The notes under the pieces are model-generated. The model had not been told where the DNA came from, searched no databases, and worked only from the letters and a program-made list of their open reading frames with translations. Made by a program: the position numbers and the translations under genes. 64,000 bases of DNA, taken from Haliotis rufescens. Taxonomy: Eukaryota. The stretch is from contig NW_025963791.1 in NCBI RefSeq assembly GCF_023055435.1, forward strand, positions 23,808,001-23,872,000, written 5' to 3'. Every line of letters begins with the position of its first letter. Position 1 is the stretch's first letter. Below, piece by piece: positions 6,285 to 58,292 of the stretch.

Positions 6285-9158
6285 TCACAAGTTCGTGTCC
6301 GTTTCCAATTGTTTTGTAGGTTCCGTTTCTGTTTCAAAGCCGAGGTTTATAAAAGCAGTGGCCCTGGGAGGCGTGATGTCAGTATTCCCCTTCACCAGTA
6401 TGTGCCCCGAGGGTGGGGAGTTCTCGAGGGTGTGAGGGGTGCTGACTATGGACGTCTTGTGTGGGGGTTGATTCTGTAGGATAACACATAATAGTACATT
6501 ACTTTTATGGTAAGGTTATCGATACAATTAGTTTCAGTAATGCTCAGTCAGCATATTAGTTTTTGTTTTGCAAACTGACAAGTTTATGCCAGTGGTTCCA
6601 TTGTTTTCAATTGTCTGCGAAGTGGCAACGTTTCGTCATAGCTACGCATTGTCGCAACTGAGGATAGATGACATCATTCATTGTTCGTGACTTCGTTTCA
6701 GCAAAAGATTGACTGAGCTGAAGTCTCCACTAGTGATCGGGAGACACACATTTTTCAAAACCAATTCAAATAAGTGTCGAAACTTACAACATTAATTTTA
6801 CTCGGACACAGATACTCCCTAATTCACCACAGCCCGTAGGTTATAGGGCATTTTGATTTTCTTTGTATTTCAAAACTTGAAGGATTACGCATTTGCTGAA
6901 TATGAATCAGAGTGAGAGTTATTAATAAAAAGGTTTTCCGAGTTTTGTTTTGAATTGAAGTTTGTTGAAAGAATCATAATGCTCGGTATCTGCATATACA
7001 TAAAAGGCAAATAGTACCACGAACCAGACAAGGCGACAAGGGCGCAAGTGACAATGCCACACTCTCGGTAGCGATAAAGAAATCACTATTCGAGTCTTTG
7101 GGCAATCTGCTTGCATACAAACCCGTAACGTTATGGTTGTGACAGTGAAGATTGACGTAGTTAGCGTTACATGAAAGATAAACTTTCGGAAACAATATTA
7201 AAACGTTATAATGAGTAAACGCATTTTTAAAAAAATCGTTTTTACAGTCACACAGGTGGATATCATTATGTTTGTTTACTGTTTAAAAATGTAGCAATAT
7301 TCCAGCTACATGACCGCGGCCTCAAAATAATCGAGTCACAGCCAGACAAACCAGTGACTGGTATTATGAACAATATGTCACGCCTTCAGGGTACGATGAC
7401 ACGCAATCGACCACGTCACTGCGCCTGGCCATCGTTGCATCTAACGACATCTTACTGGGGTCTCTCCAGTCCCGGAATCTCTACTGACAAGTCATAATGT
7501 AGTTATGCTAATTGGAAAATAAATAATTAGTTTAAATACAGACATTACCACAGCACAATAAACTTACACGTCTATGGTTGACTCCACATCTGAGAGGTCG
7601 GAGTATCATCTCTGGCATGCAGAAGAAGAGCCGGTCAAACAGAGGACAGACTAGACGAGGGTCCATGGTCCGAGGATCTCTGCGGCCTATAACATGTCAA
7701 TCAGTATCTTACACAGAAGAAGAGACGGTCAAACAGAGGACAGACTAGACGAGGGTCCATGGTCCCAGGATCTCTGCGGCCTATAACATGTCAATCAGTA
7801 TCTTACATAGAAGAAGAGCCGGTCAAACAGAGGACAGACTAGACGAGGGTCCATGGTCCGATGATCTCTGCGGCCTATAACATGTCAATCAGTATCTTAC
7901 ACAGAAGAAGAGACGGTCAAACAGAGGACAGACTAGACGAGGGTCCATGGTCCCAGGATCTCTGCGGCCTATAACATGTCAATCAGTATCTTACACAGAA
8001 GAAGAACCGGTCAAACAGAGGACAGACTAGACGAGGGTCCATGGTCCGAGGATCTCTGCGGCCTATAACATGTCAATCAGTATCTTACACAGAAGAAGAG
8101 CCGGTCAAACAGAGGACAGACTAGACGAGGGTCCATGGTCTGAGGATCTCTGCGGCCTATAACATGTCAATCAGTATCTTACAAATGTTAAACATTTCTT
8201 TATATATGATACACCATTACAATGTGATGGTTTTAACACTGTTCTCCAAATAATGCGTTTAGTATTCATATCATTACCATCATAGTATCATAATTTATTT
8301 TACGACGTATTCCGGCTGTACCATAGCGTGAGAAAACGGCAATACCAGACGTTGTACCCATTTGGGAATCATTTGAGTGAGTGAGTGATATTTTTAGCAA
8401 TATAATCACGGCGGGGGACACCAGAAATGAGCTTCGCACATTGTACTCCTGTGGGTAATCGAACCTCTGGTTTGGGTGTGATGAGTGAACACGTTAACCA
8501 CCGAGCTAATCCTAAATCATCATAATTGTTTTTACGCCGTATTTTAGCTGAATTGTGTCGGGGGAAGACAGAAATAGGCTTCACACATTGAACCCATTTA
8601 GGAACCATACCTGTGAGTAAGTGGGTCGGTGAGTGAGTGAATGAGGGTTCATCACTGAAGTGGGGCGGTCGGGTAGCCGAGTGGTTAAAGCGGTCGCTCG
8701 TCATGCCGAAGACCCGGGCTCGATTCCCGACATGGGTACAATGTGTGAAGCCTAGTTCTGGTGTCCCCCTACGTTAAATTGCTGGAATATTGCTAAAAGC
8801 GGCGTAAAACCATACTCACTCACTCACTCATCATTGAAGAACACAACTCACCCGTGATGAGGCTGACGATCATACCGACGATGATCACCACGGCCATTGC
8901 TGCCGGAGTATAGTACAGGTAGGACAATTTGTACATCGGGAGAAATGGGTCCCTGGAAATACATAATCGATATTGTTGGTGCTAGAGTTTGATGTACAGA
9001 TATTTGCGGATTTGTGTCTTGTGATAAAGGCTCAACAGAAGTATGATTGGGGATGGAAAAAAATCATTTGTTTTGAAATATCAGAAAAAATGAAAACGTC
9101 CCCATTAAATGTTCGCTGGATATGTTAGGTATCCTGCCAAAAATGAGGTGGTGGTGGT

Positions 9159-9191
<33 letters not shown>

Positions 9192-12100
9192 GTGTGTGCA
9201 ATGATGAAATTGTTCGGTTTCACCTTTGACAGAAAGTAATTTGCGTGTTTTGACCGTGTTTTGTCTCTAACAGAAGTAGTACCCCCTCCCCATCAGCCCC
9301 ATCCCTCAGAATGTTACACGGTGGGTCCCTTTGCTGCCAGAATCCGATGTTACTGTTTCCCTGACCCAATGTGCTTCTTAAATTGCCAGCATAGTTTTTT
9401 TCAAGGTTTCCTTAAATGAAGTGACAAGTGCAAGAATAGTGAAAGAAACAATGAAGACACTCATAGGCTGTTTGACCCCTTGACATCTCACCTGGATCCC
9501 ATTGGTTCAACGGAACTGGTAAAAGGTGTAACAGTACTTGGCGTTAACAACGTCATTGTCGTAGTGATGTTCCAGTTGCATCCCTCAGTTGACGTAGGAA
9601 GCGGTGTACTTGTACGCACAGCGTTGACAAAGGCACCAAAGCCAATCCAGCACATGAATGCTAAGGAGGTGAGGCAACCGACGACAGCTCCCTTAAATAA
9701 ACACATCCAGGTATGCTTTAATTACGATAACATGTGTTTGTTGTTAAACGTTGCACTGAGTCATATGATGACGATGGCTTATAATTATTCGAGTTTGGAC
9801 CATAAACACAGTGATTCATATAATGAGCGTCCCATTACAATATCCCATGTCGTAAGATGACATATCTTAACCAAGTCACTGAGTCTGACAACCCGATCTA
9901 CATGTACCTGGTCGCCTCCAACGACAAGCATAGGTTGCTGGATACCTACTCCAACACGGAACACCACCGGTATGTGTTCGGTGGACACACATGGATCTAT
10001 CCTATTATTATGCATACTGTTTTAGAAAGTTGCATTGTAATTTTGACATAACAAAAACGAACTAATTTGTTAGACTAGGCGTTAAATATGCACAATTCTT
10101 ATTTTTCCTGCCTTTTCTTTTTTAAATAACTATTATTATTATTATTATTATTAATAACCATCGCTTAACGAAGGCACCAATGCTATTCAAACACATGAAT
10201 GCTAACGAGATGGGGCATCCAGGTATGCTTTAAGTACGATAACACGTGTTTGTTGTTTGACTTTGCACAGTGTCATATTCCAGCTATATTATGGCTTATA
10301 AATATTCGAGTCTCGGTCAGACAATCCAGTGAGTGATATTATGAGCAGCCACGCCGATGACACGTCATAAACCGAGTCACCGAGCCTGACCACTCGATCC
10401 ATTAAGTCGTCGTTGACGACCAGCATGCATGTTCGTGCCGGGGGATCTACTCAAACCCGGACAAATTAGATAAGAAATACGATCAATCTTTCAAAAAATT
10501 AAGATCATTCATCAACTCGTTAATAAGCAAGCTGTTTTGCTAATATAGCATAAGGGGCGGTCGGGTAACCTAGTGGTTAAAGCGGTGGCTCGTCACGCCG
10601 AAGACCCGGGTTCGATCCCCGACATGGGTACAACGTGTGAAGCCCATTTGTGGTGTCCCGCGCCGTGATATTGCTGGAATCTTGCTAATAGCGGCGTAAA
10701 ACCAAACTCACTCATTCACTAATATAGCATAAACAGTAATAACGAGCTGTTAAAAATTGATATCCCTAGGCCTCTTCAAGTTTTATATTAATGCTATGTA
10801 GAAGAAAATACAAAAATAATTTCCTACCCGAGCGTTCGCCCATGGAAAGAACATTCCCAGCACAAACAGCCCGAACGTTGGGCCGTTCAGAATACTGTAC
10901 ACAGTGTACGATGCCTGAAAACAAGAGGCATTCTATGGTTAAAAAAAGAAGAAGTTTTATATAATGCTTATAAAAAATCCTTTTCCTGCCAAGTTAATTT
11001 TACAACTAAGTGGATAGAAATGAAATAGAACATACGTGTATAAAGCGTCAACGCCAGAGAATAACAAGTCTCGATTACACGCCGAAACAGATTCCATCCC
11101 GAAAATGACAAAATAGGGATGAAAATTACATGAATGGATCACACTAATGAAGACATCTACAGAGTTCGGCTTCATAAATACTGACATACATGACGCCTGT
11201 AACATAATGAGGTCCGGACCACACAAACCACTTGTAGTTGTATAGACAAGAGCTCATATCAGGGTTGGTCTGCGCTTTATGTAAACCGTCTAAAATGACC
11301 GTGCCGAGCAGTCATCGTCACCGCTCAATTTACAACGTGATTCATACTATCTATCTCCTATGTATATACTGAAATACGACGAAGGCATATTTACCTGCAG
11401 TACACTGCCAAGCTGAGACACCACGAAAGCAAGGGCAATTGCCAAACAACCGCAAATAATAACTGAAAATATAAATAAATTTCCTTTCTTCAATCGTATT
11501 ACACATATCATTGTGAAAAATTAATGTGTGTAATGTACATTTTATTTGTAATTTCTATGCCGCCGTTTTCATTTGTGAAATCTTGGAGATATCTACTTAC
11601 CAATAATCCTAGAGAGAATGGCCATGCCTTTATCTGGGAGGTTCTTACAACAGAATGGCTTGATGAGATCGTGAGGGATCACTGCCCCGAGTGCGTTCAG
11701 ACCGGAAGACAGGGAACTGAATTAAAGCAGAGACGATGAATTAGATTAAAGGTAAATAATTAAAATAATTGTTAACTCATGTAAAAGGGTGATACAAAAT
11801 TATCTGCGATGTTGGATGGGAGTCAGGTGTTTGGTTCGAACTCAAGAATACAATATATCAATCGAGTAAGTAAGTGTCCGTTGAAGGAATAAAACAGTTT
11901 CACATACTGTAAATCTTGAAATTAATGCGAGAATGAAAATAATCCTAAAAACGGATTTACAAACTTGGTCAATAATAATGTGAAATTTGCGAAAACACAA
12001 CACTAGACATGATTTACCATTTTAATTGTGTTTCATGTTATGCAAGGCGTTATTTTATATGCAAAAAATAAGATTACCGTGTGAATTGTTTTGTAAACTA

Positions 12101-15100
12101 AGCCGCAAATAGCAACCAGCTGTACACGCATTTTCTCCAAGATCTACCGGTTATTCAGTTAAAAATACCCAATAATAGAAAGTATACGAATTTTGATGCA
12201 ATGATCGGAAGAAATTGTATCTGAAATTATTTTTTTTAGCATTTTAGGATGTGGTACTAGTTTTTTTTAAATCTATAAATCATGGAGTATAAGTAATGTT
12301 TGAGTGGCTAAATGAGAAGGGTCATAGAACGGGATACCCACCTGAGACTTCCACTGAAAATACAAGACATGAATATTCCAGGAATTCCTTGGAGGTGACC
12401 CAGGATGTCCATCACAAAGAGGGGCACCAACTGCGAGAGATGGAAACAATATTAGAAGAACACAATATGTATTGTCATCGTGGACGAATCTAAATGAACT
12501 AACTTTTGCATAAAGTTATGAATGTGATGTGATGTCAGTCATACATATATGAATGTACCAGTACTCTTTTCTTTATGCTGTTAATATACATAGTTTGAAG
12601 CTCAAAAAAGCTGCTTTCGTAGTGGCTAATGTCGACTTCCTGTTAGTCATTTCATTGGTCGGTCAAAGTTCGCGAAAGGTCGTTCTGATGACGTGACCTG
12701 CAATGGGATAGTCTCAGCAGTAGTGTGAACTTGTATCTGATTTTAATGAGATTGAGGTACCGGTAATCTAAGCATGTGATTAATTCTGTTTTGTTCATTT
12801 AAAGCAATGATTGTTAATTGTTGAGCAAGTTTATCTCTGCAGCCATAATATATCGGGACAGAGAAACGAGAAGCCTAAGAAATAATCTACATACAGTAAT
12901 ATATATGTATGTATGTATGTATGTGTATGTATGTATGTATGTATGTAGATTATTTCTAAGGCTCATTTCTCTGTCCCGATGCCCATCCCGATTCCGATAT
13001 CTTTTTAAATAAATTGTGTCATTGAATCCTATCATACATGTAGCGCCTACCTGATCTGTCTTGGTAACTAGCTTTTCAAAGTTGATGGGGTGGCAGTCGC
13101 TGTAGAAGGCAAACATGACGATGCCTATCATGCAACAAAGGCTGATAATACCGATGAGGCCAAACAGATTCAGGATCATTGCACTGTGTGGCAGAATAGG
13201 GTACACTTTAGGTACTGTATAATAATAATGTCATGGAAATACATCTATGAACAGAAAACTACACTGACTGTAAAACCATTCATTGCCTGTGTTGTGTATA
13301 TGTTTTCTTACACAAATATTGAATACGCTAGTTGATGTATTGTGCAAAAATAGTTGAATAGTTGACAATAACCAGCAATGCATAAATTCCCAGAATATGT
13401 TCATGTGTTGTGCCTCCATAGAAATACATGATATATGGCTATATGGTCTCTTGTTCGAAGGACTTAATTATGCTTCTGTTATGCTCAAAAGAAGTAAAAC
13501 GACAACTTTATGACTCCCTCATGGTCGCCCTGCATTTTCCGTACATTTGTGACTTGGAAACACTTGGACATGATATGGCTCTCTGGACTTGGGCTTGATT
13601 ACATCCATACAGCGACATCCAGAAGAAAGCTCCGCCTATCACAACCGACCAGAACGAGTGTCGAGTAGTCGGATCGAAGCTGAAACTGCAATGTGAAATA
13701 GAACATGAATTTCCATACAATGTTATAACTATCCCAGTTATTCTGAGCTTGGCCTATTTCGTTATTATGACGCTTGGTGTCGAAGCATCCCGTCCGTGCT
13801 CTTGGGTTAAACAGATGTCAGACGTCTACGACCTGTGTCAATTTGGGCTTCATGTCCACACTGAAGAAGGGTCTTTATTATGCTGAAATACATGTATAGC
13901 TCACACTCAATCACTCAAAACTAAAGAAACCAACTCATGAAAGTTAATCCTGGCGCGGCTACCGGCGATGTCCCAGGCGTTCTGGAAGCCGCCCATGACG
14001 ATGGAACCCTGGATGAGCACTGCCAACAGCCCGGCTAACATGACCAGTGCCTGGATGGTGTCTGTCCACAGCACGGCTTTCATACCACCCTGAATAATGG
14101 AGGGAACGTTTATTTAATGAATGTATTGTTTACAGCTGCTATTTGTTGTATTAATATTAAGTACAGTGTACGTATAGCTATTCTTATGTGGATACCTGGT
14201 TGATACATGCATGGTATAAGGACTTTATTTGCACTTCCAGACAGATAAAAAGGGGCCGAATTATTGTCACTTTAATAATAAACCAATGCTCCTTAAACGC
14301 CAATGAACCTAGGTGTTCATCTATCTAGTCTGGTATACAGATGCGTTGTTTACGTGTTTTTGTACCAGTATAGTGCGTGGTTACACGCCACAGTGTGATA
14401 CGTGTTTACCGAGTAGTATACAGAGGCATCGTTTACTTACCAGTGTAGTATACATAAGCGTTGTTTACATGTTTACCTATCCAGTGCAGTATGCAGATGC
14501 GTTGTCTACCTACCAGTGTAGAATGCAGAGACGATGTTTACGTGTTTACTTACCAATGTAGTATACAGAGTAACAACCCCACCAACTGCGCCAACCGATC
14601 CCCACAAAGAAAACCCAGTTACTGAAAATAGAGACGTTAAATATTAGGTATAACCCAGTCAGTTAGCATTCCTTTTGAAAAAAAACTATCAAAGATACAA
14701 AACAACAAATTCTGATAGTAATTCCTTTACTGATAACTAATAGGGTTTAGAGTAAGAAAATAACTCAAATACTTAAAAGTCTCAACAGGGGATGATCACC
14801 TGATAGATGACTAGTCGGGTTATTCAAATGTATGTTAAACTGGTCCCCGCCTCTTTATTGATAGTGCCCCCGCAATTTTATGGAATACCTTTTGGCTCCG
14901 TACAATGGTAGAATGGTTCCAAAGCCATAGATATGTAAAAGGAAAATGTTACTGTTGACTGTGGAAAAAAACTGTAAACGTTTACAAAGTGATAACGAAT
15001 AAAAACACACCAAGCACTCGGGATTTCTTTGACATGTAAGACAGAGGCTTGCTCAGACATGTATATACGAATGTGAGGATTGAGTATTTATCCCAGAAGT

Positions 15101-17803
15101 GGTAACCACTATCGAATGAGCATCACGTCATAACATGGTTGTCAGTTTCTAATACTAAGGAGGGGACTGTGTGTTTAACAAACGCGTTGTCAAATGCACA
15201 GTCGGCATATTGTAGCTGTGTCCCTGTAATGCTTATGTGGTCTAGTGGTAGAGCGTCCGCCCGGAGAGCGGAAGGTCCGGGGTTCGATCCCCGGCAGCGT
15301 CATACCAAAAGACGTTAAAAGATGGTACTTGTTGTTACCCTGTCTGGCGCTCGGCATTAAGGGGATAAACCAAGGACTGGTCGGGTTGGAGTCAGTATAC
15401 TGTGTCTGAGTGGGGTATTCATGTTAAACTGCGGCATGGTATCTCAGTGGGCTAGCACTATAAATCGGCATCAGTCCGGACTAGTACAAGCAGCCACACA
15501 AACACACACACGTACATGCACGTCGCTATATAAGTGCAATAATCTTGGACGCGACGTTAAACCCCATTTCACCTCACCTTTAATGCTTATAGTCTGGCCC
15601 AGCTGCAAGGCCAATCGGATTTGAATGCACCAGCTACAACCCACGCCTTCGAGATACAATGACACGCAATGTGCAAGCAAACAAACAAACAAACAAAAGC
15701 TTTTGAGTCGGCTCTTGCGACAGGTACGAGGAACTGGGGGACTATTTTGACCCGGAATCCCACAGAGTTAGAACATTCAAAACAGTCATGACGTATTTCA
15801 AATATTTTAGTCTACGCCAAGAAGATACAAACACTACATATAAAATACGCATTTAGTTCTTGCCAATTTGAAAATAGGATGTACAAGTACTATTGGACAT
15901 TCTTAAAAGCGCCCTGGAGTTTCCTAAGAAGTCATTGTTTGGAGGTTACAGTTTGGTTTATAATTAAAATCTCTATTGACCTATGTTAACCGACTTGTTT
16001 AAATCGCATAATGTGTTTGCATAGATTCACCGGTATATGTGTCAAATTCAAAGCTTTACTAACCTTCCCTAAACAAATCTCAACAAACATACCAGTGACC
16101 AGGTACGTTGTTACAGCCCCCTAACCCCATAAAATTATAACATTAACATTAACATTTACTAAACATTAACCTGCATTAACGGTTCTTAAAAATATACCGT
16201 TACTTGGATTCGAACCTTCACACACCGCTTGACATGGCATGACAGTCGTGTTCCAACATATTGATACTACCGACATATAACTTCGCCCTGCGCACTGTCG
16301 ACCAGTGCACACAGCTCGAGATCGCATTCAATTATATAACTTTATACCGTAGTCAGGGAACTGTTTCGGTTCAGTAGTTAGAAAGAAAACACTTTTATCT
16401 CCTTTGATGCCGGTTTGTATACTGTTACATCAACTGTGTGTGTGCTGCAAACGTACCTTGATTCAGTGCGAGGGAAGGTGCATACAAAACAAAGGACATG
16501 TATACAATCTGAAACGAAACACAACCGTTATAATGCGTATTTCATTAACACTGTGTTCCTAATTACAGTTAAAATATGTATTGCACATCTTGATAAGCAT
16601 AAATGACATGTTAATCCAGTTTATGACCATTTCATGAAATGTTAAATAAACTATAAAAAAGACGGTTTATTAACGTTTACTGGTCAATTGAAATTATGTA
16701 TCAATGCACGTCGTTCTATTTTTCTTTAATGATGTCCGACAATAATACTTTACGCAGTTTACATACTGTCTGAACGATGAAAGTGATGGAGGCGATAACG
16801 CGGACTGGTTTGCTGAATCGCAGCTCTAAATACTACAATTGAAGAAAACATACATGTGAGTGCACAATGAAATAAATATCATAGAGAGTAGCATTTGAGG
16901 CAAGAAAGAAACTATTCTGTCAACATATATGTTATCTTCCAAATGACGAATTAAGCTTGGGATTATTAAAAATGGTTGTCATGTGTCTAAACGTGAACCA
17001 TTAAACCCATTGTTATCATTGTACAAATGTGTTTAGAAATCTATGATATCGACCATTGAAGCAATGCATTTGGTGAGCATGTGAGTTGACGAAATACAAT
17101 ATCACGCAATATTATGCCAAAAGACGAATCTCTTTGCACGCTGAACATCAAAAGTAAAGACGATAGCTGGGAACATGGCGTATAATACACATTGGTATAT
17201 GAAAACAAGTTATTTATAACTACCACCAGTTTGTGAAAAGTCTTTTGTGTGATCTAACAAAGTATTGTATAGATGTTTGCGTTTTACAATAACGGATTTC
17301 ACAGAGACTTCATGCCTTTCAGCACACAGACTTGCATTCAAACAGATTATGTATATATGACTGTGGTACAAAACAACATTCATGCATTCACGATGTTTAA
17401 TGCGTGTCACACAGCAGATTCCTTCATTGAGACTTACCTCAAACATGCTTGTCAGGTTAAGCTTGTAAAAGAATGGAATGAAAATCTGGGACGAAATTGC
17501 GATGGCAATAATGAAAGCCAAACATATCCACCAAAACATAGTAGCATAGATATACATCTCAGCCGGTGCCCCCAACAACGTCAACGCAGACATAAACGTT
17601 GCCGTTAAAGACATCGCTACAGGTAGTGTGTACATTTTTCTGCCTCCCATGAGGTATTCATCGGAGGAAGATCTGTTTCTGTCCCTGATGGCGTAGAAGA
17701 GTCCAATCCCTGCCGATGTGACCAAAGTAAGGCCGAAGACGACATAGTCAGGGACTGAAAATGTCTTTTTCTTCCCAGTGTAGATACTGTAGTCTCCAGA
17801 CAT
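6285..17803 (-). CDS. SLC5A8-like: Gene B: complete SLC5 sodium:solute symporter (SMCT/SMVT-like), 15 exons, 649 aa
   Basis: GT-AG exons with consistent phases: 17803-17438, 16832-16767, 16508-16457, 14621-14554, 14089-13935, 13685-13545, 13183-13051, 12430-12342, 11716-11601, 11462-11395, 10914-10828, 9691-9492, 8952-8852, 7686-7568, 6473-6285 (sum 1950 nt). Motifs [55 protein letters not shown]; ends ETDTNL*. Confidence 0.93.
7621..8184 (-). repeat. 6 x 94-bp tandem array made of the gene B exon-14 acceptor plus the first 68 nt of the exon
   Basis: Units start at 7621, 7715, 7809, 7903, 7997 and 8091. The lowest-coordinate unit continues into the real exon 14. Confidence 0.95.
8662..8830 (+). 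mobile_element. tRNA(Asp-like)-derived SINE, family alpha
   Basis: A/B-box head (tagccgagtgg; ggctcgattcc), tail gctggaatattgctaaaagcggcgtaaaac(actc)n, TSD tcatca(c/t)tgaag. Degenerate inverted copies lie at about 8373-8640. Confidence 0.85.
9161..9188. repeat. Poly-G run of about 28 nt (poly-C run of similar size at 58293-58320)
   Basis: Directly visible homopolymers. Confidence 0.9.
10157..10460 (-). pseudogene. Degenerate local duplicate of the 5' part of gene B exon 12 and its upstream intron
   Basis: aaggcaccaa...cacatgaatgctaa...catccaggtatgctttaa.tacgataaca repeats 9620-9960, but the acceptor segment is deleted. Confidence 0.75.
10554..10720 (+). mobile_element. SINE family alpha
   Basis: Same consensus; 14-bp TSD ctaatatagcataa. 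Confidence 0.88.
12595..12760 (+). repeat. Unclassified interspersed repeat, second copy at 45935-46090
   Basis: Shared tgtcgacttc.tgttagtcatttca.tggtc.gtcaaagttcgcgaaaggtcgttctga...tctgattttaatgagattg. Confidence 0.75.
12855..12977. repeat. Inverted repeat (about 38-bp arms) with a (GTAT)n loop
   Basis: gggacagagaaa.gag..gcctaagaaataatctacatac / gtatgtagattatttctaaggctcatttctctgtccc. Confidence 0.85.
14315..14570 (-). repeat. Degenerate tandem repeat derived from the gene B exon-4 donor junction
   Basis: Recurrent gtttac(t/c)taccagtgtagtatacaga, the reverse of TATACTACA(C/T)TG|gtaagtaaac. Confidence 0.75.
15237..15579 (+). mobile_element. tRNA-derived SINE, family beta (central domain resembles the Meta/MESC-type SINE core)
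   Basis: A box tggtctagtgg, B box ggttcgatccc, core gtcataccaaaagacgttaaaagatggtac...ggcgctcggcattaagg, tail (cacct)n, TSD taatgcttat. The core assignment is from memory and was not searched. Confidence 0.85.
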
Positions 17804-25500: not shown

Positions 25501-28500
25501 TACCTTCATTTCGGAAGTGACGTCACCAGCTCCAATATTTCACTATTAACTAAGCACAGAATTCCTCTACGATTTCTACGATTTAGATATATAAGACACT
25601 TGATAACGTGATGCTGCAAATGATTCTTATGTCTTCGACATAACATTTTACTTGGTTTATAGCACTGATCAGTGTTGGAATATATAATAATATATGATAT
25701 ATAAATGTCGTATGGAGTATACACTGTTTAAATCTTTCCGTTTCCTTCCTACTGGATTCAGTGCAATATTGTTTCAATGTGACTGCATTTACAGAGTGCG
25801 TATATGTCGTTCGTCCTCTACGCCCCATCACTGGCTCTAAATGCAGGTATGTTTTTCCTTTTGACTGCGAAAGGTCTCGTAAAGTCGTTTAAGGTTAAAA
25901 TAAGAAATAACCGAACCAAATTAATTAAAAATAAAACTCAATTAATAACGTGGTTAAAAGAGAGCTTCGTTTCGTAAATTACTGAATCTATTGATGGTTG
26001 TTGAAAGTAAGAGCATTCACAAAATTAAATAAACCAATTGAAACACTTCATTACTGAACAACATTCGCTATTAATATACGAACTAATTACCCATGCTTGT
26101 TCCCGTGCCATGTGGATTAATTTAATCATACATTGCAGCGTGAGTTGACCCGTTCGAACATATGTGTTGACGCTGTGTTGATTTTCTTTAAGTGACTGGA
26201 CTGGATCTATGGGGATCAGTGGTGGCTGTTGGAATCATTGTGACGCTATATACAGCTCTGGTAACTCATGTTTTGTTTGCGTTGTTAACATAGTGACAGC
26301 CCTATAATATAGTGATGCATGAGATGTAATTTGTCTGCCTATTCACATTGACCAGCATGTATGCATGGCCCTATAGGATATACTATCAGAACCATTACAA
26401 TTCATCGTGAATGAGTGACTTTGGTCTTTCAGTTTTATCACATCATGTCAGCTTAAAGTTGGAGTTATGATCTTGGAGATGGACGCTTTAGCTCACCTAG
26501 CCGGAAGGACAATGTAAGCTTTTGTCGGCACAAGACGTCCATCGTCATCGTCCACAACCAGTCTTCTCCGAAACTGCTTGATGGCTTCAGCTGAAATTGT
26601 GTGTGGATGTTTGTTACTGTAAGGGGCTTTGTTCAAGTCATCAACATTGGAAATTAAATTTGGACGCCAGATAGCCATCTTTAATTTGGAAAACTAGATT
26701 AAAAAATCTTCTCCAAGAGTTAGTGAGTGAGTGAGTGCGTATGGTCTTTATGCCGTTTTTAGCAATATTCCAGCAATATCACGGCGGGGGACACCAGAAA
26801 TGGGCTTCACACATTGTACCCATGTCGGGAATCGAACCCGGGTCTTCGGCGTGACGAGCTAACGCTTTAACCACTAGGCTACCCGACCGCCCTCTTCTCC
26901 AAGCGCCAGAGATCTGAAATTTGGTGGGTGAAATGGGCATCATATGCAGTTCCAAGTTTGTTATAGACATCTTGATCGGAAAAAAAAAAATTTCATTCCA
27001 TTTGTAAGTAAGGATAAGATTTATGGATGAACAACTTCTTTATTACAATTAAGAGAGACGTTTTGGTGTAGGTTCCAACACCGTTATCGAACAAGTGATA
27101 TACAGAGTATGGTTGACAAGTATATATACAGGTAGGAGGCAATGTTTACCCAGTAGAGTAGATAGCAGATGTACTTATACTGGATTGGAGAAGCCTATTT
27201 GTTCACAAAAGGGGGCAGTTAAGACATTACCGGCGAAGTCAGTAACATAAACAAAAGTGTAAAGACAGTAATATAGACAACAGGATGTAATAAAGAAGTT
27301 GTTCATCCATAAATCTTATCCTTACTTAGTACTCCAAATTCTAAATGCCTATCAAAGAAGTTATTTCATTTGTAACAACAACATATTACCATTTATTGAT
27401 ATATGAAACACAATTTATTGTTTGATAATTATTTTATACCATTAGAACCATTACAATTCACCGTGAATGAGTGACTTTGATCTTTCAGTTATATCACATC
27501 ATGTCACCTTAATGTGGGAGGAAGAGCGTCTGGTAGTTAGAGCGAAGGCCGTGGTTCGAGTCCCCTCATGGGTACAATGTGTGAAGACAAATCCCGGTAT
27601 CCTGATACTGCGACGTAAGCCCTGACACAAGGCAGACATACCTCAGTATTACTTTCAAAGGAATGTCAAACCAAACCCACAGTGACTCTTTGTGTGATTA
27701 GGGCAATCGAGTAGCTTAGTGGTTAAAGCGTTCGCTGGTCACGCAAAAGACCTGGGTTCGATTCCCAACATGGGTACAATGTGTAAAGCTGACTTCTGGT
27801 ATTGTTGTGGCATGTGTACAGCAACCAGGCCACAAATCAGGCGAAGTCAGGCACGTTGGTCGTGGAGAGAAGTTGGGTGGGCAGAATGTTTCCTGAGAGT
27901 TTCTAGGGCTTCTAGGTGCGCCTCAAACTGAAACACATGCTACACATGGTGGATTGATTTGGAACATTATCAATATGCACATAAATATTATATTAATCGG
28001 AAAGACCAATTTGTGTAGATTTATGGTACTGACAAAACGACATTCCTTAATGCCAGCTGCGGTTCTGTCACATCTACTTCATCATTCATCTCTGTGTTTC
28101 AGGGGGGAATGAAGGCTGTGTTGTGGACAGACACCTTCCAGGCTTTTGTCATATTAGCGGGGTTGTTGGCTGTTCTCATCCAGGGTTCCATCGTCATGGG
28201 TGGCTTCCAGAACGCCTGGGACATCGCCGGGAATAGATCAAGAATTTACTTCAATGAGTACGTATGGTTGATGGAACGACATCACTCTTCCCATGATCAT
28301 AACCAGTTGTTTGGATAATTAAACCGAGCTCCTCCTCATCTCGTGTATTGTCTTTGTTGCAGCTTCAGCTTTGACCCCACTACCCGCCACTCTTTCTGGT
28401 CGGTTGTTGTGGGCGGGTCCTTTCTCTGGATATCACTGTATGGAGTTAACCAGGCTCAAGTCCAAAGAGCCTTGTCTTGTCCGTCTGTATTTAAAGCCAA

Positions 28501-31500
28501 GATGTGAGTATGATGTAATACTCAATGTACATGATGAAAGCGCGCGCGTGCGTGTGTGCGTGTGTGTGTGTGTGTGTGTGTCATATATATACCTGTATAA
28601 GTACAATTATATACATATAAGTACATGCTCAGATTATACCTATTATTATTGTTTATTATTTCCCAATTGAAATGGTGCCAAAATAGAAGGCACCCGTTTT
28701 TTTTAATAATTAAAAGCCCATTGTGGGATTCCGATTATATCATAAGTTTATTAAACAGTGACGACACCAGGTTTTCCTAAATGGTGAGCGTATCCTGTCC
28801 CATCACTGGCACAAAGGCAAGTCAATTGTTCACCTGATAAGAAACACACGGGAACATACTGTACAAATCAAAATAAGGAATTACCCTGAACATGGTTACT
28901 GATGTTTCAAATTAGGAAATGCCCTCCTCGTGGCTACCATAAAAGCTTTACTAAGACCATGAATGGAGTAATTCTGATGAAACAACTCTTAATCAGTAGG
29001 CGCATTTGATCAACTGTCGTATGGCGCGCTTTGGTATGTACGTAGAAAGAGCATGCTCGAGTGTACTTCAAAAGTTGTAAAATGTGGACACCAAATGCTG
29101 GAGCTGCTGGAATATTGCTCGACACAAAGGGAAAATCTGGTGGATATTTGTTTGTCACTCTGAACTTCATTTACGAGATATCAAGCAAAGATAACACCCA
29201 CGTTATGACCATGAATCCATTGAATAAATACGTTAAAATGTGTAAAGTTAAAGGCTTGAAAATAATACATGTATTATTCAACATTGACGAGTCAGTTAAA
29301 CTTAAAATATCTGCATGAATATGATGTTAAAAGCGATGAACTGTGCTTCAGAATGCAATGTAAACAATTTATTAGATCGACTTGTGGGTGTATGTAAAAT
29401 CAACAAGACCCTTTTTAAAATCATAGAAAATATCTGCTAATAGCTGAGATCTAATATAATCCCCTCCAAAATGCAATAACAAAGTGATCTGTGGATATGT
29501 GCAATATGTCTCTTTAAATGTAAATTATCGATTAGTGATCGTAATGTTTCCTTGCTTTCTAAGGATATTATTTGTAAACCTGCCTGGCCTCATCCTCATA
29601 GTCAGCCTCTGCTGCATGATTGGCATCGTCATGTACGCCTTCTACGCCGACTGCCACCCCATCAAGTTCAACAACCTAATCAGCAAGTCAGATCAGGTAG
29701 GGCAAGTTTGGAGTTTAACAAATAGTACAATCAAACAAGAAGGAACATAACCTGAAACACCCTTACCCAGTCACACTGGTAAATGTCTTCCTTTAGCCTC
29801 TTCTGTAGCTCAGTGGTAATTTGTCAACACTTTATCTCCTCGCTCTGGTAATATGCCAGATCTTTATCTCGACACACTGGTAATATAATATGTCAGATCT
29901 TTATCTCGACACACTAGTAATTTAATATGCTAGCTCTTTATCTCGACACATTGGTAAATTATTATGACAGATCTTTATCTCGACACACTGGCAATTAAAT
30001 ATGCCAGATCCTTATCTCCACACACTGGTAATTTAATATGCTAGATCTTTATCTCAACACACTGGTAATTTAATATGCCAGATCTTTATCTCCACACGAT
30101 GGTAATTTAATATGCCAGATCTTTATCTCCACACACTGGTAATTTAATATGTCAGATGTTTATCCCCACCCGCTGATAATTTAATATGCCAGATCTTTAT
30201 CTCCACACGCTGGTGATTTAATATGCCAGATCTTTATCTCCACACGCTGGTAATTAAATATGCCAGATTCTTATCTCGACACACTGGTAATTTAATATGC
30301 CAGATCTTCATCTCCACACGATGGTTATTTAATATGCCAGATCTTTATCTCGACACACTGGTAATTTAATTTGCCAGACCTTTTCTCAACACACTGGTAA
30401 TTTATTATGCCAGATCTTTATCTCCACACGATGGTAATTTTATATGCCAGATCTTTATCTCCACACGCTGGTAATTTAATATGCAAGATCTTTATCTCCA
30501 CACGCTGGTAATTTAATATGCCAGATTCTTATCTCCACACACTGGTAATTTAATATGCCAGATCATTTTCTCAACACACTGGTAATTTAATATGTCAGAT
30601 CTTCATCTCCACACTATGGTTATTTAATATGCCAGATCTTTATCTCAACACGCTGATAATTTAATGTACCAGATCTTTATCTCGACTAGCTGGTTACACT
30701 ATATCTCTACAGACTAGCTTGTGATATGTCAAGCATGCATCTCCACACATCGGTAATATGTCAACTATTCATATCCACGCACTGGTAATATGTCAACTCT
30801 TAACCTCGACATACTAGTATTATATCCGATTTGTTTAATTCTATAAAATGGCTACCACCACGTTTCACTTTCATTGCCACAGCTCGGGGTTAACGACAGT
30901 CAGTTGTATTTAAAACCCACATATGTCACCAACCTCCACGTGCAAATGTCCTTATTCAGAAGCATGGGAAGGCAGTTAGAAGCTAGTTCAACAACATTGA
31001 AACATTCAATGATAACGCTGTTTGATATCTTATGCAAACGTCTCAACGACGCTCAATGTGCCACAATGCTCTTTTTGATAGTTTCAGTCACTTAGTGCGA
31101 CGCAAATGAAACTGTTCATCAAATATCCATAATCCAGTTACAGTCATGTCAATGCTACAGACACATTTACATTTAGATGTGATTATGATTCAGAGTTGGA
31201 CGTGAGTCGCAGGCATATTTCACTCGCTGGGTTATTCAGTTTGGCTGGTTATTCATATGATCAACACTATTTTGAACCAACGCTATACATCACGTTAGGG
31301 CAAAATAGATAGATTTATGAGAATGTACGCTCACGATAGAACACTTTCCTTAGAGATGTCATGTATTGAAATATATAAGGTCAACACGAGAGTATAATCG
31401 TTTATCTCATTTATCTGACTAAACTCATGCCATTGGGAGTAAAAGGCAGATTAGCGGTGAAAATAATAGGAATGGATCACTGAAAGTCAGTGGTGAGAAA

Positions 31501-53005: not shown

Positions 53006-56000
53006 TTACAAATGTGTAACTAATTCTTCCGGTTTCGAGGTTTCCTCGCCTATCGGGTCAAAACATCGATCAATGGCGCCACCTTTCACGTCACCTGCTT
53101 CTACGTCTGCGGGCGACTCAACGACGTAGTGATCGGACTGGATCTTCTCCGGTAACTCGTCAGGTTCTTCAAGATCCTGTTTCCTGTACTTCTGAAGATG
53201 AAATATAAGGGTTAATGTTAATAACCTATGTGAATGTTGCTGTACAATAGAAAGAGTACAGAAAGACAAGTCGTTAGTGCAGAGTAGCGTCCCTCACAAG
53301 ATCCACCCTGATTTATCTTGGTTGGTTGGTTTGTTGTTGAACGCCGCACTCAGCAATATTCCATCTACATGTATATGACGGCGGTCTGTAAATAATCAAG
53401 TCTGGACCAGACAATCCAGTGATTATTATGAGCATCGGTCCACGCCATTGGTATCGATGACATGCATCAACCACGTCAGCGAGCCTGACCACCCAATCCT
53501 GTTCGTCGCCTGTTACGGCAAGCATGGGTTGCTGAAGACCTATTCTTCCCGGATCTTCACTGACTTATGTCTCCAGGTTTAACCAAAGTGGTAAACGTCA
53601 TTCATAGTGCATCCCTCCAACATTATGCCTACTTAAATACTACTTAAAGTGGCATTATATCTCAATTACTGTAAACACGTACGTCCAGAATGGTATTCTT
53701 AGCAAACAGACCCGTGAAGATCAAGGGTAAGAGTAGGTCTTCAGCAACCCATGCTTGCCGTAAAAGGCGACTATGCTTGTCGTAAGAGGCGTCTAACGGG
53801 ATAGTGTGGTCAGGCTCGCTGACTTGGTTGATGCATGTCATCGTATCCCAATTGAGTGTGGATCGGTGCTGATGATGTCAATCACTGGATTTTCTGGTCC
53901 AGACTTGATTATTTACAGACCGCCGTCATATAGCTTGAATATTGCCGAGTGAGGCGTTAAACAGCAATTAAACGAACGAAACGAAACACAACCAAAGCTG
54001 CTGTTTCTGCAGCCTGTGTTCAACATGTGACTTGCGGTTGAAGTCAGGATGTCGCTGTCAGACAAGACAATGCACTTGTGCATTGTACTCGTGCATGCAA
54101 ATGTGCATCAGAAGACCAATGTCTCAACCCTAACAATGCTGATAGAAGTGAAAGTGATGTGGAATAGACACGGAATGTTGTCACTGACTTCCTGGTAAAT
54201 TTCTGTGAAAAAGGCCTGAGGCCATAAACATGTGTACATTTGATGAGATTACGTTACATGCATGCTGTGACCTACCCTCTTATGTTTGACCCCGCATCTG
54301 AGAGGTCTGAGTATCATCTCTGGCATACAAGGGAAGAGGCGGTCAAACAGAGGACAGACAAGACGAGGGTCAATACTCTCTGGCCGTTGCAAACCTTAAA
54401 CATGACAAAAAAAGACAAAAGGTTTGATGAATTCTATTTACCAAAATGACTAATTAAAATTATTTGTTGGGAAAACATTAAGAGCTATAAGATAGGTGTG
54501 GTTACTTTCTGCATACTTATTCATTAATAAAGCTTGTCAATGCATTTGTGACAAAAAAATTAAAAAGTTGATGAATTCTATTTACCAAAATGACTTACTA
54601 AAATGATGCATTCATTTTGGCTTATTTCATTAAATCTGGCATCTAATATTATTTTAGTAATGTTTTCAATATATTAATGACAGCAAATATCGACATGTTT
54701 AGCATATATGACAACTGGTTAATAATAGATTCAGTAGCAGACCAGTGATGAGGCTGACGAACAATCCCACGATGACGAGCACTGCCATCGCCGTCGGCGT
54801 GTAGTAGAGATAAGATAACTTGTACATCGGTATGAACGGGTCGCTGAAATGTAGGAGTACACAGGCATTTACGGATTGCTGGAAAATAGGAACCCATCGG
54901 TATGAACGATCACAGACAAATAGGAACACATCGGTATGAACGATCACGGACAAATAGGAATACATCGGTATGAACGATCACAGACAAATAGGAACACATC
55001 GGTATGAACGATCATAGACAAATAGGAACACATCGGTAAGATCGAATCTCTGGTAAGTATTCATCGGTTTGAACGGATCGCTTGTTTGTAGGATATATGT
55101 ACGTCAGTGTGAACGGATCGCTTGTTTGAAGGATCATATATGTACGTCAGTGTGAACGGATCGCTTGTTTGTAGGATATATGTACGTCAGTGTGAACGGA
55201 TCGCTTGTTTGTAGGATATATGTACGTCAGTGTGAACGGATCGCTTGTTTGTAGGATATATGTACGTCAGTGTGAACGGATCGCTTGTTTGTAGGAATAT
55301 ATGTACGTCAGTGTGAATGGATCGCTTGTTTGTAGGATATATGTACGTCAGTGTGAACGGATCGCTTGTTTGTAGGAATATATGTACGTCAGTGTGAACG
55401 GATCGCTTGTTTGTAGGATATATGTACGTCAGTGTGAATGGATCGCTTGTTTGTAGGAATATATGTACGTCAGTGTGAACGGATCGCTTGTTTGTAGGAT
55501 ATATGTACGTCAGTGTGAACGGATCGCTTGTTTGTAGGATATATGTACGTCAGTGTGAACGGATCGCTTGTTTGTAGGGTATATGTACGTCAGTGTGAAT
55601 GGATCGCTTGTTTGTAGGAATATATGTACGTCAGTGTGAACGGATCGCAGGAACATAGAAACATACCGGAATGAACGGATCACTGGACAGAAGGAATTTG
55701 TAAACGAAACGCAACAGAAAATTTATGTTTTTAAACACTTCGATCATATTGATGTTTGAAAATTGAAGTCGGGTGGGTTGGGAGCACCAAGGTATATTGA
55801 GTGAGGGATTTAGATTGAATTGAGTCATTAGGTTGGTACGGTTTTGCGCCGCATTAAGCAATATTCCAACCTTTTCACAAGGCCACTAACCTTGAACCAC
55901 AAGGCCACCCCAACACCCAACTGAGTTGGGGAAGGCGGTAAAAGCGTTGATCTAAAACGAACTACACACAATGAATGAATTGCTTATTATAGCGTCACAC

Positions 56001-58292
56001 TGATATGTTAGACAAGTTGATGTATACATCTAGAAGTACACGTCGCCATCCTGGGCCGGTACGGGTGTAGGTGTACCTTTCTCTTTTCAACCCATGCTTG
56101 CCATAAAAGCTACAATGCTTGTCGTAAGAGGCGACTAGCGGGATCGGGTGGTCGCGCTCGCTGACTTGGTTGATGCATGTATTCGATCCCAAGGGGGCAC
56201 GGGTTGCCCAGCCGTCTAAGGCGCCGCGATTCGCTGTGCAGAGTTGCGTCCTTTGGGCACGCCAGGAACCTATGATTGTGGGTTCGAATCCCGGTTCGCC
56301 CCGATTATGTTTCTAGGTTTGTCAGCACCATACCCGTGCTCGTGGTCCGAGACCTGCATCACTTCGGGCTTTCCTCCCACATTAAGCTGACACGCCGTGA
56401 TATAACTGTAATACTGTTAAAACCAAACTCACTCACTCAGTTGCGTGGATCGATGCTCATGATGTCAAGCACTGGATAGTCTGGTCCACTCGATTATTTA
56501 CAGACCGTCGTCATTTAAACTCGAGTATTGCTGAGTGCGGCGTTAAACAACAAACAAATAATTTGCATGTGAGTGAGCAAGTTTGGGTGTTGGGGTGAAT
56601 GAATAAATGCACTTGTGTAGCACCGTTTTGGACAGTATTCCAGGTATATACGTGGGTCACTATTTCACGGGCAAATGACCAGCGAGTCCGGGTACACCTG
56701 AACGAATTGGGAGCCTCAGACCACCCGATTCCTACATGTTCATCAGAGAAAGATACGTTAATGTTTAAACCGATTCTCTTTGTATACCTTGACGCTGCAA
56801 CCGTTGTCATCACGGATGTGGTTGTAGTCCCTAGTGTTGTGGTGGAAGTCATCGCTGTCGTTGTGACGGACCAGTTGCAGCCGTGAGTGAAGACAGGGGA
56901 AGAATTGTCAGTGGAAACCTTGGCGAATGCACCGAATCCGACCCAGCACATGAAGACCAGGGAGGTCAGAGCACCAACAAACGCTCCCTGAAAAGTGCGG
57001 ACATATAGCTATAACTGTCCTCTTTTTAATTTTCACAAGCGTTTTTACATTAATACGTACATTGTATACTATATTTTGAACCCATGAAGATATGAAGATC
57101 CGGGTTAGAATAGGTCTTCAGCAATCTATGCTTGTCGTAAAAGGCGACTATGCTTGTCTTAAGAAGTGACCAACGGGATCTGGTGGTCAGGCTCGCTGAC
57201 TTGGTTGATGCATGCCATCGTATCCTAATTGCGTGGATCGATGCTCATGATGTCAATCACTGGATTGTCTGGTCCAGTCTCGATTAGTTACAGACCGCCC
57301 TCATATAGCTGGACTAGGGCACGCGTATAAAAAATCCTTTGGCGTTGATGTTTTTAATTTGAAAGACCCTATTTGAACAGATAACGTTTCCCCAAAACAT
57401 CCGATCTATGATACGTTAAGGACAGGTCATCCATATTATGTCAACCTGTGGGAATACTTACCCATGCGTTTGCCCAGGGGAAGAACATGCCCAGAACAAA
57501 CAACCCAAACGACGGTCCATTGAGGATGCTGTAGATAGTGTAGGAGGTCTGGAACATGGACAAGTATATGATTTGAGGTAGCTGTTGGATTGTTGTATTT
57601 AATGACATTTAACGATAGTTTCGTTACTACCTGAAATTTGTTTCAAAATTATTTGGACCTGAGTGAGTAATAATTGCTTCACGCCCCATAAAAAATCTTG
57701 TAGCCATTTGCGACAGTCTAATAACACAGACAAACAGCTTTAAAGTAGATAATGCTTCATATTATACGTAAAATACTTTTACAGTGTCTTACTCTGTACT
57801 AGTTAATAATTCAGTTTTAATAAAAAAGAAAGATATTTAGTGAGTGGAGGGTGCTACCGGTAAGGCAGGACATGCTTACCCTTTTCGCGAAAACCTGGTG
57901 TCATTAACTTTAACCAACATTCCGCAAACGACCGCTGTCAAAGTTATAATGTTTCGTTTCGTTCGCGCAGTAAATGTTTTCGGTTCCAATACAGAAGCTA
58001 CGCTACAAGGACATCTCATTTGAAACCCATTCAATGCTTTATATTCCAATAGATAGGAGGGCCTGAGGTGTAATTGTTTTGCGAACAGGGTATTGTCGTG
58101 GTTTCAGCTTCTATGTTAACTTTCCAAATTGATGTTTCTATTTTCAGAAACATTGACTACCTTTGTGCAACATTGGTAGTTCCTAGTCATGAACCATTGT
58201 AATTCCTAGTTCCAGAAGAGGTTTGTTTGGACAATAATATAGATTAAAGGGCAGTTTAGAAATGATTTTCATATTGTGGTGGTTTACCCCCT

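What the first reader, a model, noticed from the sequence alone, without database searches (positions are those of the whole stretch)
7568..8184. Tandem array of five in-frame mini-copies of exon 14, each with its own acceptor and a newly created donor
Seen: on the gene B strand each 94-bp unit reads ...ctgattgacatgttatAG|GC CGC AGA GAT CCT CGG ACC ATG GAC CCT CGT CTA GTC TGT CCT CTG TTT GAC CGG CTC TTC TTC TGT|GTAAGA. The unit junction places GTAAGA directly after a codon boundary. Each upstream unit is therefore a stop-free 68-nt cassette (e.g. 8156-8089) that starts in phase 1 and ends in phase 0, exactly like the true 119-nt exon 14 (7686-7568). The copies differ at the amino-acid level (PRT/PGT/HRT/PQT; RLFF/RFFF; C/Y), and copies 2 and 4 are of the same type. 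Inference: splicing could give (a) the full-length protein, (b) any one mini-exon joined to exon 15, an in-frame 17-aa deletion that keeps the DTNL end, or (c) read-through to V-R-Y-stop, removing the tail. The 26-nt spacers are too short to splice and the phases are incompatible, so the cassettes would be mutually exclusive. This would be a nascent mutually exclusive exon array built by a VNTR.
Basis: partly seen in the sequence, partly recalled or inferred. Interest (0 to 1): 0.85.

Follow-up and report, generated by a model that had tools for sequence, protein, structure and literature searches.

The report
Minisatellite copying a transporter exon's acceptor
A 94-base stretch spanning the end of an intron and the start of an exon in a mollusc-type sodium-transporter gene has been copied six times in a row; this puts five look-alike mini-exons in the intron, most likely unused decoys and not a new set of alternative exons, though no RNA data could be obtained to settle it.

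Summary
Window 7620-8183 holds a 94-bp x 6.0 tandem array, 96% matched. On the minus strand each unit is the last 26 nt of intron 13 plus the first 68 nt of exon 14. The gene is an intact 15-exon SLC5/SMCT-like sodium:solute symporter, one of at least 11 tandem paralogues. Only this paralogue has the array.

One correction: the GTAAGA donor was not newly made. It already lay in the single-copy intron.

The "nascent mutually exclusive exon array" reading is untested and less likely than silent decoys:
- The mini-exons lack the best conserved half of exon 14.
- No paralogue has such an array.
- There is no selector/docking RNA structure.
- The in-frame property is expected by chance in a few percent of such arrays.

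Junction-spanning minisatellites recur here (4 of 25 array loci in 274 kb). Other first-stage notes of this scan, on other DNA of this genome, report the same pattern. They are also known in human F7 and ABCA7, where the decoys are silent or minor.

The parts
8852..8952 (-). Exon 13 of gene B (last transmembrane helix, ...[28 protein letters not shown]). The acceptor AG is at 8954-8953. The donor is G|GTGAGT, with GT at 8851-8850. The exon ends in phase 1.
   Evidence: Sequence read; tblastn to P0031/P0016; conserved with genes C and D.
7687..8851 (-). Intron 13, 1165 nt. 470 nt of it are the five extra units. The upstream part holds an inverted pair of SINE-like copies.
7620..8183 (-). 94-bp x 6.0 minisatellite. 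With each unit taken as spacer plus mini-exon, the units are 8182-8089, 8088-7995, 7994-7901, 7900-7807, 7806-7713 and 7712-7619.
   Evidence: TRF; unit listing; genome-wide uniqueness.
7713..8156 (-). Five 68-nt pseudo-exons (8156-8089, 8062-7995, 7968-7901, 7874-7807, 7780-7713). Each is preceded by TTATAG| and followed by |GTAAGA. They are separated by 26-nt spacers that read V-R-Y-stop in frame.
7568..7686 (-). Authentic exon 14 (119 nt, phase 1 to phase 0), encoding (G)[39 protein letters not shown]. Its first 68 nt are the sixth copy.
   Evidence: Same length and same splice positions in six paralogues. Motif conserved in distant homologues.
7562..7567 (-). Authentic donor of exon 14, CGT|GTAAGT.
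6285..6473 (-). Coding part of exon 15 (acceptor ...ATCCTACAG|AAT, phase 0). It encodes 62 residues ending in T-N-L, followed by the stop TGA at 6287-6285. Many homologues end in T-K/R-L, a class I PDZ-ligand pattern.
6285..17803 (-). Gene B: an intact 15-exon SLC5 / sodium:solute symporter gene of the SMCT/SMVT/NIS branch.
   Evidence: Pfam PF00474; PDB best matches SMVT, SMCT1 and NIS; exon-by-exon tblastn without in-exon stops.

Best explanation
This is a young minisatellite born from a tandem duplication of the intron-13/exon-14 boundary of an intact SLC5A8-like (sodium-coupled monocarboxylate transporter-like) gene. The founding 94-bp segment was the last 26-27 nt of the intron plus the first 67-68 nt of the exon. 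It was duplicated with at most 1 nt of microhomology and then expanded to six units by slippage or unequal exchange. An X-Y-X order of unit types shows a two-unit step.

Only the last unit is continuous with the conserved 3' half of exon 14, so it is the real exon. The five upstream units sit inside intron 13 as decoy 3' splice sites and pseudo-exons.

Inferred, not shown: the mRNA is made mainly by joining exon 13 to the last acceptor. The upstream copies are silent or give minor products. Most of those products would carry a premature stop (VRY-stop on read-through, or a frameshift when two units are included).

The in-frame single-mini-exon route is an accident of where the breakpoints fell. 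A GTAAGA happened to lie in the ancestral intron tail, and the exon breakpoint happened to fall at a codon boundary.
For: Shown:
- The array, its unit structure and its uniqueness.
- GTAAGA is present in the unique flank of the first copy.
- Exon 14 is 119 nt with the same acceptor and donor positions in six paralogues, all single-copy.
- The part missing from the mini-exons (LPExILxPLR[F/C]GVxH) is the best conserved part of the exon, also in Pomacea, Batillaria and other homologues.
- Gene B is intact.
- There is no selector/docking inverted repeat, no unusual RNA stability (z = +1.6) and no Rfam match.
- Only one of the mutations that separate the copies is synonymous (CGG to CGT); the other five change an amino acid.
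- Junction-seeded arrays recur in the same gene cluster in apparently intact genes: gene D exon 13 acceptor, and two donor arrays of 47 and 15 units.

Precedents:
- In human F7 IVS7, a 37-bp VNTR spans the exon 7 donor and the identical pseudo-sites stay silent (PMC1557585).
- In human ABCA7 intron 18, a 25-bp VNTR includes the exon 18 donor. One-unit retention occurs as an out-of-frame isoform (PMC5954066).

Chance estimate (my reckoning from unit length and phase): a GTAAG core in a 94-nt unit has a chance of about 0.1, and a matching phase 1/3. So a few percent of acceptor-seeded arrays would look like in-frame mini-exons.
Against:
- All six acceptors are identical over 26 nt.
- The mini-donor TGT|GTAAGA is only slightly weaker than the real CGT|GTAAGT. 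A paralogue uses GG|GTAAGA as its authentic exon 14 donor. On sequence alone the decoys are therefore competent.
- Early globin experiments with duplicated acceptors gave conflicting results on which copy is used (as reviewed in PMC1557585).
- In a human BRCA1 intron 9/exon 10 partial duplication, the transcript carrying the whole duplicated region, its intron part included, was detected, which implies that the upstream acceptor was used (PMC11839443).
- The 27-nt intron-derived part shows no substitution in any copy, against six or more in the exon-derived part. That is weak evidence (P about 0.1) and could hint at constraint on the splice signals.
Confidence: 0.6

Rival explanations
1. The array damages splicing of this allele. 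The first-transcribed or any upstream acceptor is used often. This would give transcripts that end in ...FFC-VRY-stop or are frameshifted ([11 protein letters not shown]-stop), lose the conserved tail and PDZ-type end, and are likely degraded by nonsense-mediated decay. Gene B would then be a hypomorph or on its way to becoming a pseudogene, tolerated because at least 10 paralogues lie next to it.
For: - The six acceptors are identical and the decoys look competent.
- Every outcome except one route carries a premature stop.
- In the BRCA1 partial duplication, a transcript with the retained duplicated intron piece and a premature stop was detected, which implies use of the upstream acceptor (PMC11839443).
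- There is large paralogue redundancy, and at least one neighbouring copy already has a decayed exon 14 (C13:23773k: 106 nt, with stops).
Against: - Gene B has no other defect in 15 exons.
- Similar or larger decoy arrays sit in neighbouring genes that also look intact.
- The F7 decoys are silent (PMC1557585).
Confidence: 0.2
2. One reading: the five units work as mutually exclusive cassette exons. One mini-exon would be spliced from exon 13 and on to exon 15. This would give in-frame tail isoforms that lack 17 residues and differ at a few positions, with VNTR copy number setting the repertoire.
For: - The phases fit.
- The 26-nt spacers forbid adjacent splicing.
- Two units in series clash in frame.
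- The isoform keeps the T-N-L end.
- The donor core GTAAG is intact in all five units and the acceptors are intact in all six.
- Steric hindrance and frame incompatibility are recognised ways of enforcing mutual exclusion (established knowledge; the reviews PMC5740500 and PMC6071210 were listed but not read).
Against: - The route needs the conserved, well-defined exon 14 to be skipped.
- For units 1-4 the donor can also reach later unit acceptors, which gives stops.
- The deleted block is the most conserved part of the exon.
- No paralogue has anything similar.
- There is no selector structure.
- Substitutions between copies look neutral.
- The in-frame property is expected by chance in a few percent of such arrays, and many such arrays are reported in this genome.
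Confidence: 0.1
3. Assembly artefact: the real locus has one copy, or a different number of copies, and the array was inflated or mis-built by the assembler.
For: Tandem arrays are error-prone in assemblies. No reads could be laid on the locus.
Against: - The copies differ at six or more positions, in a structured X-Y-X pattern, and are not identical.
- The contig is 45.7 Mb in a 615-contig assembly, which suggests long reads.
- Many other minisatellites of similar build are present nearby.
Confidence: 0.05

Closest known systems
Human F7 intron 7 (IVS7) 37-bp VNTR (Borensztajn et al. 2006, PMC1557585)
   Same: It is a minisatellite whose terminal unit spans an exon/intron boundary, so that several splice sites of identical sequence lie in tandem. 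The exon-adjacent site is the authentic one.
   Different: F7 multiplies a 5' splice site downstream of the exon, and its units hold little exon sequence. Here a 3' splice site plus 68 nt of exon is multiplied upstream of the exon, and each unit also carries a donor-like GTAAGA, so the decoys are complete pseudo-exons. In F7 the silence of the decoys was shown by experiment; here nothing is known.
Human ABCA7 intron 18 25-bp VNTR (De Roeck et al. 2018, PMC5954066)
   Same: The VNTR directly flanks an exon and includes its splice site. In ABCA7 a decoy is used to give a one-unit-retaining, out-of-frame isoform.
   Different: It is on the donor side and has 12 to hundreds of units. In ABCA7 array length correlates with skipping of the next exon. 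No population or RNA data exist here.
Partial-exon tandem duplications that include an acceptor, such as BRCA1 intron 9/exon 10 (PMC11839443)
   Same: An intron tail plus an exon head is duplicated in tandem. In that case the upstream acceptor is used, so the duplicated intron piece is read as exon and brings a premature stop. This matches the VRY-stop route here.
   Different: It is a single 2-kb duplication in a very long exon, a pathogenic allele and not a multi-copy minisatellite, and the copy has no donor-like site behind it.
Mutually exclusive exon clusters made by tandem exon duplication (for example Dscam, 14-3-3 zeta, tropomyosin; reviewed in PMC6071210 and PMC5740500)
   Same: The copies are tandem, homologous and of the same phase. 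Exclusion by a too-short intron and by frame clash is possible.
   Different: True clusters duplicate whole exons with spliceable introns, encode interchangeable full segments, are conserved between species and often have docking/selector RNA pairing. Here the copies are truncated, the spacers are 26 nt, no pairing is found, and the array is private to one paralogue.
SLC5A8/SLC5A12 (SMCT), SLC5A6 (SMVT), SLC5A5 (NIS) transporters
   Same: Gene B matches Pfam SSF and these solved structures best. The closest named proteins are gastropod 'sodium-coupled monocarboxylate transporter 2-like'.
   Different: Substrate and role are unknown. It is one of at least 11 tandem paralogues. The tail motif DPRLxCPxFDxxFPxLPExILxPLRFG was seen in 19 of the 32 homologues retrieved; its wider taxonomic spread was not tested.

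Membership tests
Sodium:solute symporter family (SLC5, Pfam PF00474) | Significant match to the SSF profile and to solved SLC5 structures | tested here: met
   Exon 1 and exon 5 open frames hit PF00474 at E 3.9e-09 and 1.6e-08, above the curated cut-off. PDB matches: SMVT 8e-28, SMCT1 2.7e-27, NIS 1e-22.
Sodium:solute symporter family (SLC5, Pfam PF00474) | Complete, uninterrupted coding exons | tested here: met
   Fifteen exon-level matches to P0031/P0016 cover the protein from residue 1 to the tail, without stops inside exons. The exons were checked one by one.
Splice-junction-spanning minisatellite (F7 IVS7 / ABCA7 intron 18 type) | Tandem array whose unit contains an authentic exon/intron junction, with the exon-adjacent unit being the real site | tested here: met
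   The paralogue alignment fixes the real acceptor at 7687/7686.
Splice-junction-spanning minisatellite (F7 IVS7 / ABCA7 intron 18 type) | Copy number polymorphic between individuals (VNTR in the strict sense) | not testable with these tools
   No second haplotype is in the assembly.
Splice-junction-spanning minisatellite (F7 IVS7 / ABCA7 intron 18 type) | Extra sites silent or minor in the transcripts | not testable with these tools
   No RNA reads. No transcript-derived protein of this gene is in the protein collections.
Mutually exclusive exon cluster | Copies are whole exons of similar length encoding interchangeable segments | tested here: not met
   The copies are 68 nt against 119 nt. 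They lack the conserved [15 protein letters not shown] block.
Mutually exclusive exon cluster | Same phase at both ends, so that any one copy keeps the frame | tested here: met
   68 and 119 are both 2 mod 3. The single mini-exon to exon 15 route is in frame.
Mutually exclusive exon cluster | A mechanism enforcing one-of-many choice (short intron, frame clash with decay, or competing RNA pairing) | tested here: inconclusive
   The 26-nt spacers and the frame clash are present. But non-adjacent units can still be joined, and no docking/selector pairing exists.
Mutually exclusive exon cluster | Conservation of the cluster in paralogues or related species | tested here: not met
   All seven other exon 14 homologues on the contig are single-copy.
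Mutually exclusive exon cluster | Transcripts that contain exactly one of the copies | not testable with these tools

The most novel reading that the evidence does not exclude
The five units are really used, one at a time, as cassette exons joined to exon 15. A copy-number-variable minisatellite would then have created, in one step, a set of mutually exclusive tail exons for a transporter. That would be a live example of the birth of alternative exons from a VNTR, in a genome where minisatellites may be seeded preferentially on splice junctions.
Probability: 0.08. Interest if true: 0.75.

Novelty: new variant of a known kind. Interest (0 to 1): 0.35.

Why it matters
If the decoys are silent, the locus is a natural mirror image of the F7 system: six 3' splice sites, identical over the 26 intron nucleotides before the AG, spaced 94 nt apart, each followed by a usable donor. 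It could show how a lophotrochozoan spliceosome picks the right acceptor (scanning, exon definition or proximity).

If the decoys are used, the locus would show how a minisatellite can either poison a gene or hand it new in-frame exons.

The wider pattern may be the more interesting lead. Several unrelated arrays in this cluster, and by other first-stage notes many in this genome, start exactly on splice junctions. That deserves a genome-wide test against annotation.

Tried and rejected
- Protein collections: the exon 15 open frame found no candidate. A search with the tail region of homologue P0006 found only Batillaria and Pomacea proteins, not this species. The exhaustive search with the 39-aa exon 14 peptide gave 30 hits of at most 63% identity, none of them this gene's product. 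No annotated isoform could therefore be consulted.
- Spliced model: it was examined only exon by exon. Joins were made only inside a script, to read frames.
- Dscam-like docking/selector pairing: none involves the units.
- Stable RNA structure hiding the decoys: none. The array folds less well than most of the shuffled controls (18 of 20).
- Known RNA family in the intron: none.
- Selection on the mini-exon reading frame: too few substitutions to test. Five of six events change an amino acid.
- Constraint on the spacer: 0 against 6 or more changes, P about 0.1, not significant.
- Enrichment of junction-seeded arrays: 4 of 25 loci against 0.7-1.5 expected, P 0.005-0.06 depending on the exon count used. 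This is post hoc and only suggestive.
- Splice-site weight matrix: not built, because the six acceptors are identical over the scored range and exon boundaries could not be fixed independently.

Full report
**What is there**

Tandem Repeats Finder reports a single array at window 7620-8183: period 94, 6.0 copies, 96% matches, no indels, score 1072. Read on the minus strand, each unit is a 26-nt spacer, GTAAGATACTGATTGACATGTTATAG, followed by 68 nt that begin GCCGCAGAGATCC and end TTCTTCTGT. The sixth copy ends TTCTTCTGC and continues without a break into ATGCCAGAG...CATAGACGT|GTAAGT. That continuation is the rest of a 119-nt exon (7686-7568). The array is unique in the 1.33-Gb assembly. The window is contig C13, 23,808,001-23,872,000.

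**The gene**

The minus-strand gene (gene B, 17803-6285) is a sodium:solute symporter.
- Its exon open frames hit Pfam PF00474.
- Its best solved relatives are SMVT, SMCT1 and NIS.
- The nearest named proteins are gastropod "sodium-coupled monocarboxylate transporter 2-like" from Pomacea and Batillaria.
- Exon-by-exon tblastn with two full-length homologues recovers 15 exons with no stop inside any of them.

Exon 13 is 8952-8852 and ends ...ATCACGG|GTGAGT in phase 1. Exon 15 starts at 6473 behind ...ATCCTACAG and ends with T-N-L and a stop at 6287-6285. Gene B lies in a tandem cluster of at least 11 paralogues within 274 kb.

A script that joined the pieces only to read frames confirmed the following.
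- The mini-exon coordinates and the phases are as stated (phase 1 in, phase 0 out, like the real exon).
- The single-mini-exon to exon 15 route is in frame. It lacks exactly [17 protein letters not shown] and keeps DTNL.
- Read-through gives ...FFC-V-R-Y-stop.
- The spacers are 26 nt.
- The variants are PQT, PRT, PGT, HRT, PGT; RLFF/RFFF; C/Y.
- Two copies are identical.
- Two units in series give [11 protein letters not shown]-stop.

One point needs correcting. GTAAGA is not made by the junction. It stands in the unique intron sequence just before the first copy (TTT-GTAAGA, 8182-8177). The duplication only moved exon-like sequence in front of it.

**Origin**

The founding segment of 94 bp covers the intron tail and the exon head, and the junction shows 0-1 nt of microhomology. 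The copies differ by about six independent substitutions. The order of unit types is X-Y-X (units at 7968 and 7780 identical, a different one between them), which points to a two-unit expansion step. This is ordinary minisatellite behaviour.

The window has five other minisatellite loci and the 274-kb cluster has 25. A 94-bp founding duplication in this exon-dense cluster has roughly a one-in-ten chance of covering an exon boundary.

**Paralogues and homologues**

Seven other exon 14 homologues lie on the contig, all single-copy. In six of them the exon is 119 nt with the acceptor and donor in the same places. One is decayed. Their peptides, and those of distant homologues, share DPRL(V/I)CP(L/I)FDxxFPx-LPExILxPLR(F/C)G(V/I)xH. 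The duplication breakpoint falls between FPx and LPE. The mini-exons therefore lack the best conserved half. An isoform built from a mini-exon would remove a block that the family keeps.

**Are the decoys competent?**

On sequence alone, yes.
- The six acceptors are identical over 26 nt, with branch-like CTGAT/TTGAC and a weak pyrimidine tract.
- The mini-donor TGT|GTAAGA matches the consensus at +1 to +5. The real donor is CGT|GTAAGT.
- One paralogue uses GG|GTAAGA as its authentic exon 14 donor.
- The 26-nt spacer is below any metazoan intron minimum (established knowledge). A unit's donor can therefore reach only units two or more steps on, which gives a frameshift and a stop, or exon 15.
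- For the fifth unit (7780-7713) exon 15 is the only partner, so this unit and the real exon are truly exclusive.

**Is there regulation?**

No inverted repeat links the units to a common docking site. The array RNA is not unusually stable (z = +1.6). Rfam finds nothing. Only one of the substitutions between copies is synonymous. The intron-derived 27 nt carries none of the changes, but with so few events that is not significant (P about 0.1).

**Precedents**
- Human F7 has a 37-bp VNTR whose first unit spans the exon 7 donor. Five to nine identical pseudo-sites follow and are functional when tested, but they are never used while the first is intact (PMC1557585).
- Human ABCA7 has a 25-bp VNTR that includes the exon 18 donor. 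Retention of one unit occurs as an out-of-frame isoform, and array length correlates with skipping of the next exon (PMC5954066).
- For acceptors the record is mixed. The early globin duplications disagreed (reviewed). In a BRCA1 intron 9/exon 10 partial duplication, a transcript retaining the duplicated intron piece was detected; it carries a premature stop and implies use of the upstream acceptor (PMC11839443).

**The same pattern nearby**

In the 274-kb cluster, four of 25 array loci start on a splice junction:
- this one;
- the exon 13 acceptor of gene D (window 54884-55648; units are copies of CCTACATTTCAG|CGACCCGTTCA...);
- a 24-bp x 47 array made of an exon end plus donor (...GTCTCAG|GTACAT, L036:5193-6330);
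- an 82-bp x 15 array made of the exon 1 end plus donor (...TATTCCAG|GTAAGA, L020:4818-6028, minus strand).

Chance expectation is 0.7-1.5, giving P 0.005-0.06. That is suggestive only. Other first-stage notes on this genome list many more acceptor and donor arrays; these are unchecked. Two things follow. Such arrays are evidently tolerated in genes that look intact. And among many of them, one whose unit happens to hold GTAAG in a compatible phase is expected by chance (about 0.1 x 1/3).

**Verdict**

The best reading is a junction-seeded minisatellite whose five upstream units are decoy pseudo-exons in intron 13, with canonical splicing to the last copy (confidence about 0.6).

**What could not be done**

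The protein collections hold no product of this gene. Which acceptor is used remains untested.

Noticed in passing
window 54884-55045 and 55070-55648 (minus strand, gene D): There are two adjacent minisatellites (34 bp x 4.8 and 40 bp x 14). Their units are diverged copies of the exon 13 acceptor plus about 22 nt of exon (real site ...CCTACATTTCAG|CGACCCGTTCATACCGATGTAC at about 54843). In the 34-bp units nearest the real site the AG has become GT.
   Followed up: partly
L036:5193-6330 (C13:23907193-23908330, plus strand): A 24-bp x 47 array is made of the end of an SLC5 paralogue exon plus its donor (...GGGAGTCTCAG|GTACAT repeated). This gives 47 tandem decoy 5' splice sites directly behind the real one.
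   Followed up: partly
L020:4818-6028 (C13:23752818-23754028, minus strand): An 82-bp x 15 array has units that copy the end of exon 1 plus its donor and the intron start (...AGTGTATTCCAG|GTAAGA/GTCAGG...) of another paralogue.
   Followed up: partly
C13:23648001-23922000 (window plus L015-L036): A tandem cluster of at least 11 SLC5A8-like paralogues lies on both strands. Four of its 25 minisatellite loci are seeded on splice junctions (expected 0.7-1.5). A genome-wide test against annotation is needed.
   Followed up: partly
window 29849-30683; L032:1853-3199; L023:937-1360: Homologous minisatellites (37, 96 and 93 bp units) sit about 100-150 nt downstream of the same exon in three paralogues (genes C, A and D). 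This intronic array is therefore older than the gene duplications. Likewise window 24347-24873 matches an array in intron 1 of gene D (C13:23880072-23881064).
   Followed up: partly
L012 (C13:23773113-23773182 region): The exon 14 homologue of one paralogue is 106 nt, not 119, and has in-frame stops. It is probably a pseudogene copy within the cluster.
   Followed up: no
window 8408-8508 and 8674-8774: Two SLC-unrelated repeat copies lie in inverted orientation inside intron 13 (101-nt arms, 73% complementary). The same element occurs elsewhere in the window (for example 10555-10720 and 26724-26892).
   Followed up: no
window 9161-9189: A run of 29 G (29 C on the gene strand) lies in intron 12 of gene B. 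A similar run lies near 58250-58290 in gene D.
   Followed up: no
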